Source: Malacoraja senta (taxonomy: Eukaryota). Taken from it: a DNA stretch of 64,000 nucleotides. The stretch lies in assembly GCA_038087875.1 (NCBI GenBank), contig JAXLNO010003415.1, positions 62,001 to 126,000 on the forward strand, read 5' to 3'. This document shows positions 21,251 through 63,570 of the stretch, piece after piece. The notes under the pieces were generated by a model that saw only the letters and a program-made list of their open reading frames with translations, did no database searches and was not told the origin of the DNA. Positions within the stretch are counted from its first letter, which is position 1. The number at the start of each line of letters is the position of its first letter. The translations under genes and the position numbers were made by a program.

Positions 21251-23758
21251 ATTAATCCTGGGTAGACAAAATGCTGGAGAACCTCAGCGGGTGTGGGTGA
21301 GGCAGCATCTATGGAGCGAAGGAAATAGGCAACGTTCCGGGTGGAAAGCCTTCTTCAGATCTATCCTGACCTAGTTTGCTGCCACAGAACCTCCTATCAC
21401 TTACGATCACCTTCACCCTAGTGCTTTATTCTCCCCCGCTGTGACTCAGAGCCCGCGGCAACAAACCTGACAGCACCTGGTGCTCTCCCCTGACCGGACA
21501 TTTCCTCCTAACAGTATCCAGGGGATGTTTTAGAACGCGACAACATAGAACTATTATGAATGAATGATCGATGGTCGCGGTGGACTCGGTGGGCCGAAGG
21601 GGTTGTCGAACTATGTTGTATCATTCAATTAATCAAAGCATTCAAGGCATTTCTGTTACTGCGGTTTTTAGTACGTAAGCTGATCTGATATGCACGGCTT
21701 TGTATAATGCTCTCTCATTGAAATCGTAATAAAGACTGATGGTTCACTCCAGACTTTGTAATGGATCTTCTACAAACATGGTGTCAGAATGTTTGAACCA
21801 ATTCTCCAGCTTATTGGCCTGAGTTTATTTTAGTTTGGTTTTGTTTTGGTGCCCCGGTTCGTGCCATGATATGGGCCTGGTCACCTTCGGTAAAGCCGTG
21901 CACCAGCTGTCCACCATCCAGAGTCCTGCTCAACAAATACTCTCACAGTACATGGATCTTTTTGACAATAAACTGGGCAAGCTCCCTACCAAGTACACTA
22001 TTATAGCCGACCCGGATATCGCACCACTCGTTCGTCCCCCCCCCCACCGAATCCCCCACGCAATGAGGGACCGCGTCAAAAACGAACTGGACAGAATGGA
22101 AGCATTGGGCGTGGTTGCCCCTGTCAATGACCCACCTGTCTGGGTTTCCACCATGGTCACAGGCACCAAGAAGAATAAAGACGAAATAAGGATTTGTATA
22201 AACCCCAGGGACTTAAACACTGCCATCAAACGTCCAAACCACCCAATGCGGACAGTGGAAGAAGTCGTGACACACCTGGAAAAAGCAACGGTATTCTCAG
22301 TCCTAGATGCAAAGAGCTCATTCTGGCAGATTCCGCTAGTCCACGCATCCTCCATGCTAACCATATTTGGAACACCTTTCGGACGATATCGTTTTTTACG
22401 CATGCCGTTTGGTATTGATTCAGCTAGTGAGGTCTTCCAGCGCACTATGGAACAGTTCCTTGCCGGGTACAATAGACAATAGACAATAGGTGCAGGAGTG
22501 GCCATTCGGCCCTTCGAGCCAGCATCGCCATTCAATGTGATCATGGCTGATCATCCCCAATCAGTAACCCGTTCCTGCCTTCTCCCCATATCCCCATGAC
22601 TCCGCTAACTTTATGAGCTCTCTCTTGAAAGTATCCATGTGCTGTAATTGTGGACGACATCCTGGTCGCCGGGCGCGATGTCCATGAACACGACTCTAAC
22701 CTAAAATTAGTCCTAGATCGTGCCAGTGAGGTAGACCTCAAACTCAACCCGCGCAAGTGCAGGTTTCAAGTCAACGAGGTGAAGTACGTGGGTCACGTAT
22801 TCACCAGCAACGGCCTCAATGCGACCCTTCCAAGAACATTGCCATCAGCGAGATGTCGGCTCCTGCAGACCTAACTGCTCTGCAACGATTTCTCGGCATG
22901 GTAAACTACCTGGGAAAGTTCATCCCAAACTTCAGCGAACTCTCAGCCCCGCTGCGGCAGCTAACTCACAAGGACGCGCACTGGTCCTGGCACGAGCAAC
23001 AACAGAGGTCGGTCGCCACCCTCAAACAACAAATGTCTTGTACTCCCACCCTCACAGACTTCGATGTCGAGCAGCCCGTCACCATAACTTGCGATGTCTC
23101 CCAGTACGGGCTGGATGCTGCCTGCCTACAAGACGACGGTAAGGGTCCCCGACCTGTCTCCTCTGCCACCCGCACCATGTCTGACACACAACAGCGCTAC
23201 GCTCAGATCGGAAAGGAACTGCTAGCCGTAACTTTCGCCTGCAAGAAATTCAAGGACTTTATCTTTGGGAACCCGGTCACAATTGAAACCGACCACCAGC
23301 ATCTGGTCAGCATCCTGATCAAACCAATACACGCGGCCCTGCGCGCTTACAACACATGATGATGGAACTACAAAGGTATAACATGAAACTGATTCACAAA
23401 CGTGGAAAGATCATGTATCTAGCCGACAGCCTGTCACGGGCCCCGCGCAGCACCTGCGAGAAGCACCTGTCAGACGACGATGGGTATGTGGTCATGATGG
23501 TCTCTTACCTTCCTTCCGCGTGTTTAGACCTTGCAACACAAACGGCTGCGGACGAAACGCTACTCGATGCTCTTAGGCTGTGGGCCGAGCATCAGAAATG
23601 TGTCTAGAATCCAGTTTTCGTGACCCAAGTCACCAAACTACATGACATTTTCCACAGATTTAGATGAAATATAAGTGAGAAGGATGTCATAACTCGTCAT
23701 TGCCAAACGCTGCACATTAATTAATTAAACTAATTAGAAAATAAGATCGGGAAAGTAA

Positions 23759-23774
23759 GCGCCATCTAGTGGCC
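23759..23774 (-). promoter_or_regulatory. CTCF core motif GGCCACTAGATGGCGC inside the DNA transposon
   Basis: Match to the established CTCF core consensus CCASYAGRKGGCRS; binding is not shown. Confidence 0.55.
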
Positions 23775-23911
23775 AATGCCCATATTACACCATGGGCAGC
23801 CTATTTCCGTGTTGCAGTCCATTTAAACTATATATGATTATACCTATATATATATATGTAGTCCATGTACTTCATGAATGAATGAGTGAATGAACGAGTG
23901 AGTGAGTGAAT

Positions 23912-24968
23912 TGTTGTTGTTGTATTCAATTTATTGTCATGATCTCATTTTAGAGACAACGAAATGGATTTTCCTTACAGTCAAGTAACATAAAAATAAA
24001 TAATAAATAAATAAACATTTTTTTTTAAAGCACAAACACAGAAGTCCACACACAACATAATCCCACAGCGGCACCAAAGTTAAGGAAGGTACCATAGTCC
24101 AGCCAGCCTCCCCGCCGATCTTCCCAGATGTTCCCCCGTGGTCGCGGCCTCCCGAGGACCCGCAGTCGCCGCCACGGGCGGCCCGATGCCCAAGCCCTCT
24201 CGCCGGGAACGGTGGAACCCCGACGCCGAACCCCGACGGAGAACATCCTCAGCGGCCCGGACCTCCAGATCATCCGGACTCCGCGATGTTGGTCAGCGCC
24301 GCCCGCGTTGGGAGCTCCGCGAACCACAGCTCCGCGATGTCGGTGCAGCAGGCCCAGCACTCCGGAGCTCCCAACGCGGGCGGCGCTGACCAACATCGCG
24401 GAGTCCTGCGACTCCACCCGGCTCGGCCTGCGGACTCCGGTGGGAGGTGGCTGATCTGGAGGTCCGGGCCGCTGAGGATGTTCTCCGTCGGGGTTCGGCG
24501 TCGGGGTTCCACCGTTCCCGGCGAGAGGGCCTGGACCTCCAGTTAAGCCACCTCCCACCGGAGTCCGCAGGCCGAGCCGGGTGGAGTCGCTGGACTCCGC
24601 GATGTTGGTCAGCGCCGCCCGCGTTGGGAGCTCCGCGAACCACAGCTCCACGATGTCGGTGCAGCAGGCCCAGCACTCCGGAGCTCCAAACGGCGATCCC
24701 CTGTAAGGCATCGCCCGCCCCGCGATGTTTCCAACGTTGCTCCGCTGCTGCCAGAGCGGGGGGGGGGGGGGGTGGGGCGAGGACGCGACTCGAATAATAG
24801 TCGCATCCTCTCAAGGAAGCGACTGAAGGACGGTATCCCCCTTATCGTACCCTCTTTCCCCACATAAAAACATTTAAAAAACCCCACAAAAACGCTCTTC
24901 AAACATAACAAAAACATAACAAAAATACAAAAAGATACCGGACTGAAGGCGGAGGCAGCTAGCAACAG
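23912..24968 (-). mobile_element. GC-rich non-coding retroposon with a Rex-Babar-type 3' tail, nested in the DNA transposon
   Basis: Minus strand ends ttcgttgtctc..atgacaataaattgaatac(aac)n, resembling the Rex-Babar tail tttcattgtcc..atgacaataaa; sits in a TGAA/TGAG microsatellite with GTGAAT on both sides. Confidence 0.6.
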
Positions 24969-62600: not shown

Positions 62601-63265
62601 CTTTGCATCTAGGACTGAGAATACCGTTGCTTTTCCCAGGTGTGTCACGACTTCTTCCACTGTCCGCATTGGGTGGTGTGGACGTTTGATGGCAGTGTTT
62701 AAGTCCCTGGGATTTATGCATATCCTTATTTCGTCTTTATTCTTCTTGGTGCCTGTGACCATGGTGGAAACCCAGGCAGGTTGGTAATTGACAGGGGCAA
62801 CCACGCACAATGCTTCCATTCTGTCCAGTTCGTTTTTGACGTGGTCTCTCATTGCGTTGCGGATTCGGTGGGGGGAACGAACGAGTGGTGCGATATCCGG
62901 GTCGGCTATAATAGTGCACTTGGTAGGGAGCTTGCCCAGTTTATTGTCAAAAAGATCCATGTACTGTGAGAGTAGTTGTTAAGCAGGACTCTGGATGGTG
63001 GACAGCTGGTGCACAGCTTTACCGAAGGTGACCAGGCCCATATCATGGTACGAACCGGAATCCGTGGCACTAAAACAAATCAAAACTAAAATAAACTCAG
63101 GCCAATAGGCTGGAGAATTGGTTCAAACATTCTGACACCATGTTTGTAGAAGATCCATTACAAAGTCTGGAGTGAACCATCAGTCTTTATTAAGATTTCA
63201 ATGAGAGAGCATTATACACAGCCGTGCATATCAGATCAGCTTACGTACTAAAAACCGCAGTAACA
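59653..63265 (-). mobile_element. Mirror copy of the decayed Gypsy element, without the DNA transposon insertion
   Basis: 3' LTR 59653-59909, 5' LTR remnant 63141-63265, PBS 63130-63140, GAAAT on both sides. ORF 60962..61561 is continuous across the site interrupted in the left arm. Confidence 0.93.
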
Positions 63266-63380
63266 GAAATTCCTTGAATGCTTTGATTAATTGAATGATA
63301 CCACATGGTTGAACAACCCCTTCGGCCCACGAGTCCATCGCGACCATCGATCATTCATTCATAATAGTTCTATGTTGTCG

Positions 63381-63570
63381 CACTTTCGCGGTCACTCCAT
63401 GCGCACTAGGGGGAATTTATAGAACCCAATCAATCAACAAACCCGCACGTCTTTGGGAAGTGTGAGGTACCGAAGCTCCCGGAGGAAACCCACGCGGTCA
63501 TAGGGACAAACCACACAGACAGCACCCGAGATCAGAATCCAACCCGGGTCTCTGACGATGTGTGGCGTCG
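63381..63570 (-). mobile_element. HE1-type SINE 5' portion, contiguous with the SINE tail inside the right arm
   Basis: gacccgggttggattctgatctcgggtgctgtctgtg..gaccgcgtggg core continues across the duplication boundary. Confidence 0.7.

What the first reader, a model, noticed from the sequence alone, without database searches (positions are those of the whole stretch)
21537..63381. 42-kb quasi-palindrome: inverted duplication with about 20-kb arms carrying two divergently oriented MHC class I genes
Two-thirds of the window is a mirror image, including TEs, unique DNA, minisatellites and exons. Five 180-bp windows differ at 2 (40801), 3 (37021), 2 (29041), 4 (26641) and 7 (22801) sites; the two cytoplasmic exons are identical; and each arm has private insertions. 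If real, this is a recent head-to-head class I duplication, a structure known to favour arm-to-arm gene conversion. The alternative is two divergent MHC haplotypes joined in inverted orientation by scaffolding.
Basis: partly seen in the sequence, partly recalled or inferred. Interest (0 to 1): 0.8.

Follow-up and report, generated by a model that had tools for sequence, protein, structure and literature searches.

The report
Inverted 20-kb duplicate across scaffold gap
Two 20-kb stretches of a skate genome, each carrying only the tail end of an MHC class I-like gene, lie as mirror images on either side of an unsequenced gap; they are most likely two real, fairly old copies, but neither the mirror-image layout nor the existence of two whole genes has been shown.

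Summary
The inverted repeat is real in the assembly. The left arm is 21537-41247 and the right arm 42376-63381. They align in eight colinear blocks covering 16,524 bp, with 3.6% substitutions.

"Two class I genes" is not supported. The window holds no alpha1 or alpha2 exon. It holds one alpha3 exon, in the left arm only, 265 nt long with a +1 frameshift. The two arms share only 91 coding letters.

The 200-N centre is an assembly break. The left contig stops 60 bp into a minisatellite that runs 0.7 to over 10 kb in related skate loci. The right contig starts 14 nt before the end of the transmembrane exon. The two sides cannot be continuous.

Several points favour real paralogues over alleles:
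- There are four private transposon insertions.
- The outer boundary is abrupt and lies inside a SINE, with unrelated flanks.
- Both forms are detected in two other runs.

Against that, a gap sits between the copies, and this scan noted many other duplications across 200-N gaps in the same genome.

No raw reads were available, so the depth test could not be done.

My odds:
- Real duplication with layout unproven: about 0.6.
- Haplotig mis-join: about 0.27.

There is no sign of arm-to-arm conversion; the longest identical tract is 231 bp. Interest is low.

The parts
21537..41247 (-). Left arm of the inverted repeat (19.7 kb). It is mostly transposon sequence and carries the 3' exons of a class I-like gene on the minus strand at its inner end.
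42376..63381 (+). Right arm (21.0 kb), the mirror image of the left arm at 96.4% identity.
41248..42175 (-). Left-contig sequence with no counterpart on the right contig. It holds the TM-alpha3 intron (low complexity, 48-bp repeat at 41692-41847), the alpha3 exon, and the first 60 bp of the upstream minisatellite.
41847..42111 (-). Alpha3 (C1-set) exon, 265 nt. It has a +1 frameshift in a C-run (GAGCCCGAGG) relative to intact skate homologues. It is the only alpha3 exon in the window.
   Evidence: Pfam C1-set E=6e-7; PDB 6lup E=6.6e-16
41234..41338 (-). Transmembrane exon of the left copy (105 nt).
39931..39960 (-). Cytoplasmic exon 1 of the left copy (GKSGYNPTK). It is identical to 43635-43664.
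39395..39441 (-). Cytoplasmic exon 2 plus stop codon of the left copy (SERGENSSNSSAPA*). It is identical to 44216-44262.
42376..42389 (+). Last 14 nt of the transmembrane exon of the right copy. The contig begins here.
43635..43664 (+). Cytoplasmic exon 1 of the right copy.
44216..44262 (+). Cytoplasmic exon 2 plus stop codon of the right copy.
42176..42375 (.). Central 200-N scaffold gap. It sits in the (C)nTCACTGT minisatellite upstream of alpha3. Its true size is unknown.
29845..30168 (.). N-run in the left arm, homologous in position to 56641-57088.
56641..57088 (.). N-run in the right arm, homologous in position to 29845-30168.
23564..25591 (.). 2,028-bp element private to the left arm, with terminal inverted repeats TAGGCTGTGGGCCGAG. 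The empty site is seen in the right arm, in runs X23 and X24, and in a related organism (X1).
31442..32136 (+). LINE 3' fragment private to the left arm, with a (GAACTT)n tail. It is a third copy of the LINE at 34.9-36.7 kb.
50969..54045 (+). LINE insertion private to the right arm (endonuclease ORF at 50594-52393).
55810..56310 (.). 0.5-kb insertion private to the right arm.
63250..63600 (-). SINE that runs unbroken across the right outer boundary (63381/63382).
   Evidence: junction words found in X23 and X24
21537..21640 (+). The 3' part only of the same SINE, cut exactly at the left outer boundary. The neighbour at 20600-21536 is a high-copy repeat unrelated to the right flank.
34893..36740 (+). 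LINE ORF2 shared by both arms. It is intact (615 aa) in the left arm and split in the right arm (46899-48281).

Best explanation
The two arms are two real copies (paralogues) of a roughly 20-kb transposon-rich block. The block carries the 3' end (alpha3, transmembrane and cytoplasmic exons) of a skate MHC class I-like gene.

Inferred history: the block was duplicated by a rearrangement whose outer breakpoint lies in a SINE. The copies have since drifted apart by 3.6% and each has picked up its own transposon insertions.

Each copy runs at its inner end into a long GC-rich minisatellite and low-complexity intron that the assembler could not cross. A scaffolder then joined the two contig ends with a placeholder of 200 N.

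Shown: the duplication, its divergence, its private insertions, its breakpoint, and the fragmentary gene content.

Not shown, and resting on scaffolding alone: that the copies are adjacent, that they are inverted, and that either belongs to a whole gene.

Nothing indicates ongoing exchange between the arms.
For: 1. Uniform 3.6% divergence over 16.5 kb, with four private insertions that look like genuine transposons (TIRs, a LINE tail).

2. Homology stops abruptly at 21537/63381 inside a SINE.
- The right copy has the whole element.
- The left copy has only its 3' part, next to a high-copy repeat.
- The 619 bp beyond the right arm match nothing in 1-21536.
- This is the look of a repeat-associated duplication breakpoint. 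Two alleles would be expected to run on together.

3. Divergence is lower near the gene (2.5%) than further out (4.1%, p=4e-7). That is the opposite of what old balanced alleles around a selected class I gene would give.

4. Both forms are detected in two runs other than the window's own letters.
- The right-arm empty site 23563>25592 (+AGTCGC) and the right-junction words are present in X23 and X24.
- Contigs with left-arm substitutions are present in X24: records 19 and 20 have 1 other letter where the arms differ at 5 and 8 substitution sites.
- A 170-bp contig of a related organism (X1) bridges the left junction at a depth typical of X1's near-identical (presumably single-copy) pieces.

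5. The family is truly multi-copy in skates. Amblyraja radiata has two direct alpha3-TM-cyt units 4.4 kb apart on a chromosome, and further copies lie in little skate and Rhinoraja.

6. The gap position has its own explanation: the minisatellite upstream of alpha3 is 7 kb in L001 and over 10 kb in L002, and Amblyraja contig L004 starts right at alpha3.
Against: - A gap between the two copies is one of the published hallmarks of false duplications (PMC9516828).
- First-stage notes of this scan list many other tandem and inverted duplications across 200-N gaps in this same genome. Some lie inside housekeeping genes (RAB11FIP3, RBM19, GTF2I), so retained haplotigs seem common here (unchecked notes).
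- Local diversity is high. Two contig types in X24 differ at 2 of 250 flank sites, so 3.6% between haplotypes is not absurd.
- Only 619 bp of right flank are visible. A deletion of more than 0.6 kb in one haplotype would also give the boundary seen.
- The runs are contigs only and the laid stretch is full of repeats. Co-occurrence of both forms is therefore weakly shown, and whether those samples are independent individuals is unknown.
- Read depth, the decisive measure, could not be obtained.
Confidence: 0.6

Rival explanations
1. Mis-joined haplotypes (a false heterotype duplication). The right piece is the second haplotype of the same locus. It was kept in the primary assembly because it is too divergent to be purged, and Hi-C scaffolding placed it next to its partner in reverse orientation across a 200-N join.
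For: - A gap lies exactly between the copies, and the right copy starts at the gap. This is a criterion in PMC9516828.
- Both contigs end near the same hard sequence.
- Many similar cases across 200-N gaps are noted in this genome, including in single-copy housekeeping genes.
- X24 shows about 0.8% heterozygosity in the flank and mosaic contigs (left-arm substitutions with right-arm indels), as expected of a third haplotype of one locus.
- Summed contig depths over the least repetitive arm bins are only 0.8-1.5 times the flank bin in X23, X24 and X7, not 2 times. The tool warns this is not a copy number.
Against: - The flanks are unrelated beyond an abrupt boundary inside a SINE.
- There is 3.6% divergence plus four transposon insertions in 20 kb.
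- Divergence is lowest near the gene.
- The right junction and left-type contigs occur in the same two other runs.
- The left junction is bridged in a related organism.
- Contigs matching one arm's form in X24 have depth 27-39, against 15+7.5 and 46 in the flank, which is not clearly half.
Confidence: 0.27
2. One reading: a true palindrome with two complete, divergently transcribed class I genes whose 5' halves and shared promoter region lie in the gap, kept alike by arm-to-arm gene conversion.
For: - Both copies point their 5' ends into the gap.
- The coding letters shared by the arms are identical.
- Divergence falls towards the centre.
Against: - No alpha1 or alpha2 exon is present in the window.
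- None lies within 23 kb upstream of alpha3 in little skate L001, nor between the tandem units of Amblyraja L003.
- The alpha3 exon is frameshifted.
- Only 91 shared coding nt are available, p about 0.1.
- No long identical tract exists.
- Related units in Amblyraja are direct, not inverted.
- The gap would have to hide two minisatellites plus two gene halves.
Confidence: 0.08
3. An artefact of another kind: a fold-back chimeric read or contig, or two unlinked family members from different chromosomes joined by mistake.
For: - Contigs of this family end at the minisatellite in several assemblies, so wrong joins between such ends are easy.
- Skate MHC genes often sit on unplaced scaffolds (PMC10751288).
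Against: - Fold-back chimeras give identical arms, not 3.6% divergence with private transposons.
- The arms are by far each other's closest relatives (96% against 80-92% to the other loci). That fits a local duplication better than distant family members.
Confidence: 0.05

Closest known systems
MHC class I duplication blocks (segmental duplications carrying class I genes or gene fragments together with transposons; Kulski et al. 2002, cited in PMC10751288)
   Same: A block of tens of kb made mostly of retroelements plus class I exons is duplicated, and the copies diverge and gain private insertions. The breakpoint lies in a repeat.
   Different: Here only the 3' exons are present and the peptide-binding exons are not seen. 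The orientation is inverted in the scaffold. The host is a skate, where MHC assemblies are poor (PMC10751288).
False heterotype duplications in long-read vertebrate assemblies (Ko et al. 2022, PMC9516828)
   Same: A duplicated pair on one scaffold separated by an assembly gap, in a divergent immune-related region, in an assembly that appears to hold many such cases.
   Different: The outer flanks are unrelated and the boundary lies inside a SINE. Half depth and 1-copy k-mers, the defining measures, could not be tested.
Large ampliconic palindromes of sex chromosomes (from my own knowledge: primate X/Y palindromes with arms over 99.9% alike, kept so by gene conversion)
   Same: Inverted arms of about 20 kb around a spacer, with genes in the arms.
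   Different: The arms here are only 96.4% alike, with no long identical tracts. The spacer is unsequenced and the genes are fragments. It does not behave like those palindromes.
Skate alpha3-TM-cytoplasmic units (Amblyraja radiata CM021395.1 locus L003; little skate L001; Rhinoraja L002)
   Same: The same exon set, preceded by the same (C)nTCACTGT minisatellite. DNA identity is 80-92%. No alpha1 or alpha2 exon lies nearby.
   Different: In Amblyraja the two units are direct repeats 4.4 kb apart with in-frame alpha3. Here the units are over 20 kb blocks, inverted in the scaffold, and the one alpha3 is frameshifted.

Membership tests
Complete MHC class I gene | Exons for the peptide-binding alpha1 and alpha2 domains (Pfam MHC_I) | tested here: not met
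   tblastn of 150 class I-like proteins, many full length, finds none in the 64 kb at E<=1e-3. They could lie in the gap.
Complete MHC class I gene | Alpha3 C1-set exon in frame | tested here: not met
   One exon only, at 42111-41847. C1-set E=6e-7 and 6lup E=6.6e-16. It is 265 nt, a +1 shift against intact Amblyraja proteins. An assembly indel in the C-run cannot be excluded. The right copy has no alpha3 in the sequence.
Complete MHC class I gene | Transmembrane and cytoplasmic exons with splice sites | tested here: met
   Left copy: 41338-41234, 39960-39931, 39441-39395, with AG/GT borders. Right copy: the last 14 nt of TM plus both cytoplasmic exons.
Palindrome homogenised by arm-to-arm gene conversion | Inverted arms of many kb | tested here: met
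   19.7 and 21.0 kb, but only as scaffolded.
Palindrome homogenised by arm-to-arm gene conversion | Near-identical arms or long identical tracts | tested here: not met
   96.4% identity. The longest identical tract is 231 bp, against a simulated 95% limit of 172 and 99.9% limit of 247.
Palindrome homogenised by arm-to-arm gene conversion | Arms physically joined through a sequenced spacer | not testable with these tools
   The centre is 200 N inside a minisatellite. Only short contigs of public runs were available.
False heterotype duplication (PMC9516828) | Assembly gap between the duplicated pair | tested here: met
   The gap at 42176-42375 lies exactly between the arms.
False heterotype duplication (PMC9516828) | Half-diploid read depth and haplotype-specific 1-copy k-mers on both copies | tested here: inconclusive
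   No raw-read run was available. Contig word depths are noisy: X24 contigs matching one arm's form at 27-39 against flank values of 22.5 and 46.
False heterotype duplication (PMC9516828) | Copies are the same locus, so homology continues into shared flanks | tested here: not met
   Homology ends abruptly inside a SINE. 63382-64000 has no match in 1-21536. Only 619 bp of right flank are visible, so this test is weak.
Segmental duplication (real paralogues) | Over 1 kb at over 90% identity, with defined breakpoints | tested here: met
   16.5 kb aligned at 96.4%. The outer breakpoint is at 21537/63381 in a SINE.
Segmental duplication (real paralogues) | Both copies present together in independent individuals | tested here: inconclusive
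   Right junction words and the right empty site are found in X23 and X24. Left-type contigs are found in X24. The left junction is bridged in X1. Transposon cross-matches and the unknown relatedness of the samples limit this.

The most novel reading that the evidence does not exclude
A true palindrome of over 42 kb in a skate. Two class I-derived alpha3-TM-cytoplasmic units face each other across a core of long minisatellites, and the arms are old (3.6% apart) and not homogenised. If so, it is an inverted duplication that has survived without conversion or collapse, in a family of units that lack peptide-binding exons in several skates.
Probability: 0.35. Interest if true: 0.4.

Novelty: new member of a known kind. 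Interest (0 to 1): 0.22.

Why it matters
Mainly as a caution. Counted at face value, this window would add two class I genes and a palindrome to a skate's MHC inventory. What is actually sequenced is one frameshifted alpha3 exon and two copies of a gene tail, joined by a placeholder.

If the duplication is real, it is one more class I duplication block, this time in a cartilaginous fish. It would show that long minisatellites next to alpha3 are what break skate MHC assemblies.

If it is a haplotig, it is one more false gene gain.

The recurring alpha3-TM-cytoplasmic units without peptide-binding exons in several skates may deserve their own look.

Tried and rejected
- Depth test. All 24 runs found are Logan contigs with no raw reads, so full versus half depth could not be measured.
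- Single read-laying run (on 20400-26399). The stretch proved to be largely Gypsy and high-copy repeat. About 55,000-98,000 short contigs were laid per run, the pieces were 120-250 bp, and most rows were hidden. Only a few junction and contig observations were usable, and I do not treat the depths as copy number.
- Right-junction word search. It had only 2 sampled words. It was positive in X23 and X24 and silent in the other organisms, which divergence alone could explain.
- Reaching sequence beyond 64000 or identifying the assembly:
  - The exact LINE ORF is not on record.
  - The GPCR search found no protein of the window itself.
  - The right-flank ORF found nothing.
- Rfam: no family at gathering score.
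- Fold-back chimera: rejected because the arms differ by 3.6% and by transposons.
- Transposon insertion in one copy as the cause of the outer boundary: rejected. The SINE is whole on the right, and its 5' half is absent from all 21.5 kb on the left. A deletion in one haplotype remains possible.
- Transition/transversion ratio of about 1 as a sign of error: rejected, because comparisons between skate species give the same ratio.
- I did not read or infer any letters for the N-runs.
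Full report

Yes. The window has four N-runs: 15903-16123, 29845-30168, 42176-42375 and 56641-57088. Self-BLAST on the opposite strand gives a colinear chain from 21537-41247 to 63381-42376.

Aligning the eight blocks with MAFFT gives 16,524 aligned bases, 596 substitutions (96.4% identity) and about 337 gap columns. Divergence per 500 bp runs from 1.0 to 6.6%.

The inner 5 kb differ by 2.5% and the rest by 4.1% (p=4e-7).

**2. Anatomy of the arms**

The arms are mostly transposons:
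- a degenerate Gypsy element (RT, RNase H and integrase pieces at 21.8-26 kb, mirrored at 61-63 kb);
- a Gypsy integrase/chromodomain piece;
- SINE copies;
- a LINE whose ORF2 is intact in the left arm (615 aa) and split in the right arm.

Four segments are private to one arm and have the marks of real insertions:
- Left arm: a 2,028-bp element with terminal inverted repeats.
- Left arm: a LINE 3' piece ending in (GAACTT)n.
- Right arm: a 3.1-kb LINE with an endonuclease ORF.
- Right arm: a 0.5-kb piece.

Shared minisatellites differ by about two units each.

**3. The "two class I genes"**

The best solved relative of the alpha3 translation is chain 6lup (E=6.6e-16). By my recollection this is a shark class I chain. 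Pfam gives C1-set.

I used that exon to collect 150 class I-like proteins and ran them against the window with tblastn. The only hits are one alpha3 exon, plus weak hits to the tail exons and two to transposon ORFs. No alpha1 or alpha2 exon appears anywhere in the 64 kb.

Exon borders in the left copy, on the minus strand:
- alpha3: 42111-41847
- transmembrane: 41338-41234
- cytoplasmic 1: 39960-39931
- cytoplasmic 2: 39441-39395

The alpha3 exon is 265 nt. Compared with in-frame Amblyraja radiata proteins (…VEPGDTAPLSCRVEH…) it carries one extra base in a C-run, GAGCCCGAGG. This is either a dead copy or a consensus error. I cannot tell which.

The right contig begins 14 nt before the end of the transmembrane exon, so it has no alpha3.

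The coding letters shared by the arms number 91 and are identical. The introns between them differ by about 2.5%. Zero differences in 91 nt has p about 0.1, so it does not argue for conversion.

**4. The gaps, tested first**

Left of the central gap lies GAGACAGTGAGGGGG-type repeat, 60 bp upstream of alpha3. Right of it lies the middle of an exon on the other strand. The sides cannot be continuous or in frame.

Related loci show what the left contig ran into:
- Little skate (L001, GCA_028641065.1): the same (C)nTCACTGT array fills about 7 kb directly upstream of alpha3.
- Rhinoraja longicauda (L002): the array fills at least 10 kb.
- Amblyraja radiata chromosome CM021395.1 (L003): the array fills 0.7-0.9 kb.
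- Amblyraja contig L004: it starts right at alpha3.

So the 200 N are a placeholder in a minisatellite. The true distance is unknown and probably kilobases.

The two inner N-runs sit at homologous places in the arms. Their edges match to the base on one side and within 8 bp on the other, in ordinary sequence. Either the same element defeated the assembler twice, or both were masked by content. I did not try to read them.

**5. Outer boundary**

Homology starts abruptly at 21537/63381. Aligning the boundary with four other SINE copies in the window shows two things:
- On the right, a SINE runs unbroken across the boundary.
- On the left, only its 3' part is present, abutting a high-copy repeat at 20600-21536 (depths).

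The 619 bp beyond the right arm match nothing in 1-21536.

An insertion into the left copy is therefore excluded unless it exceeds 21.5 kb. That leaves a duplication breakpoint in a SINE, or a deletion of more than 0.6 kb in one haplotype.

**6. Public reads**

All runs found are Logan contigs, so the depth test was impossible. Laying four runs on 20400-26399 mostly showed how repetitive the stretch is. The usable results:
- The empty site of the 2,028-bp element (23563>25592 with AGTCGC, the right-arm form) is present in X23 and X24. A similar empty site is present in related organism A (X1).
- X24 records 19 and 20 match the left arm at all but one substitution, where the arms differ at 5 and 8 substitution sites. 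They carry the right arm's 7-bp and 3-bp indels, so they are mosaics.
- 16 of the 29 listed variant letters are the right-arm letter.
- A 170-bp X1 contig bridges the left junction (121 and 49 bases on either side, 7 mismatches) at a depth typical of that run's near-identical (presumably single-copy) pieces.
- The two sampled words across the right junction are held by X23 and X24.

Together these say both forms exist outside the assembly, and apparently within one sample. The samples' independence is unknown, and Gypsy relatives contaminate the counts.

Contig depths are ambiguous. In X24, contigs matching one arm's form show 27-39 against flank values of 22.5 and 46. Summed depth in the cleanest arm bins is 0.8-1.5 times the flank bin. 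The tool itself warns against reading depths as copy number.

**7. Base rate**

Earlier first-stage notes of this scan list many other duplications across 200-N gaps on other pieces of the same genome. Several are inverted with 17-27 kb arms, and several lie inside housekeeping genes.

These notes are unchecked. Exon duplications of RAB11FIP3, RBM19 or GTF2I across a gap are nonetheless hard to read as anything but retained haplotypes. That raised my prior for a haplotig join.

PMC9516828 lists a gap between copies, half depth, discordant links and 1-copy k-mers as the marks of false duplications. Only the first could be tested here, and it is met.

**8. Weighing**

For real paralogues:
- the abrupt SINE breakpoint with unrelated flanks;
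- 3.6% divergence with four insertions;
- lower divergence near the gene;
- both forms in other runs;
- the left junction in a relative;
- a family that is multi-copy in skates.

For haplotigs:
- the gap;
- the genome-wide pattern of duplications at 200-N gaps;
- high local diversity (about 0.8% in X24's flank);
- mosaic contigs;
- the short visible right flank.

My odds:

| Reading | Probability |
|---|---|
| Real duplication | 0.6 |
| Haplotig mis-join | 0.27 |
| Other artefacts | 0.05 |

Given a real duplication, I put the chance that the copies are truly adjacent and inverted at little better than even. The join is Hi-C-type, and the Amblyraja units are direct repeats.

**9. Comparison and novelty**

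This works like a class I duplication block: transposon-rich, with a repeat-associated breakpoint and drifting copies. It does not behave like the conversion-maintained palindromes of sex chromosomes. Membership as a complete class I gene fails on the features I could test.

It is a new member of a known kind at best, and an assembly artefact at worst. PMC10751288 already set the thorny skate aside because its MHC genes lie on unplaced scaffolds, which fits the picture of skate MHC regions that do not assemble.

Noticed in passing
window 29845-30168 and 56641-57088: The two inner N-runs (324 and 448 N) lie at homologous places in the arms. Their edges coincide to the base on one side and within 8 bp on the other, in non-repetitive sequence. 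Either the same element broke both copies or both were masked by content.
   Followed up: partly
L001:16374-23522; L002:1-10000; L003:6501-7418 and 11001-11865; window 42113-42175: A (C)nTCACTGT minisatellite directly upstream of the alpha3 exon is conserved across skates. It varies from 0.7 kb to over 10 kb, and contigs tend to end in it.
   Followed up: yes
L003:7418-10027 and 11865-14286 (Amblyraja radiata CM021395.1); L001:23448-27131: Alpha3-TM-cytoplasmic units without any alpha1 or alpha2 exon nearby recur in skates. Amblyraja has two direct units 4.4 kb apart. Little skate has two alpha3 copies with none within 23 kb upstream. They could be gene fragments, alternative 3' cassettes or a short class I-derived chain.
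   Followed up: partly
window 8612-9436 (+): A GPR139-like rhodopsin-type receptor ORF (7tm_1, E=3e-20) stops before the last helix. The nearest named relatives are Narcine bancroftii proteins at 66% identity. It belongs to a family greatly expanded in sharks and rays, and is probably a pseudogene.
   Followed up: partly
window 1-3090 (-): A Ty3/Gypsy pol reading frame (protease, RT, RNase H, integrase zinc finger) is open for 1,030 aa and runs off the window start. It looks like a young element.
   Followed up: no
window 34893-36740 (+) versus 46899-48281 (-): The shared LINE ORF2 is intact (615 aa) in the left arm and split into 245 + 197 aa in the right arm. A third, 3' fragment at 31437-32102 is 93% identical to the right copy.
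   Followed up: no
both arms; L001, L003 and L004 against the window: The transition/transversion ratio is about 1.0 between the arms (294:302), and similar between skate species. This is low for a vertebrate.
   Followed up: partly
window 20436 and 20603: At 20436 X23, X24 and X1, and at 20603 X23, X24 and X7, show only another letter than the assembly. This means either private variants of the assembled animal or base errors.
   Followed up: no
L003:3504-3703: The Amblyraja radiata chromosome locus also contains a 200-N gap close to its class I-like units.
   Followed up: no
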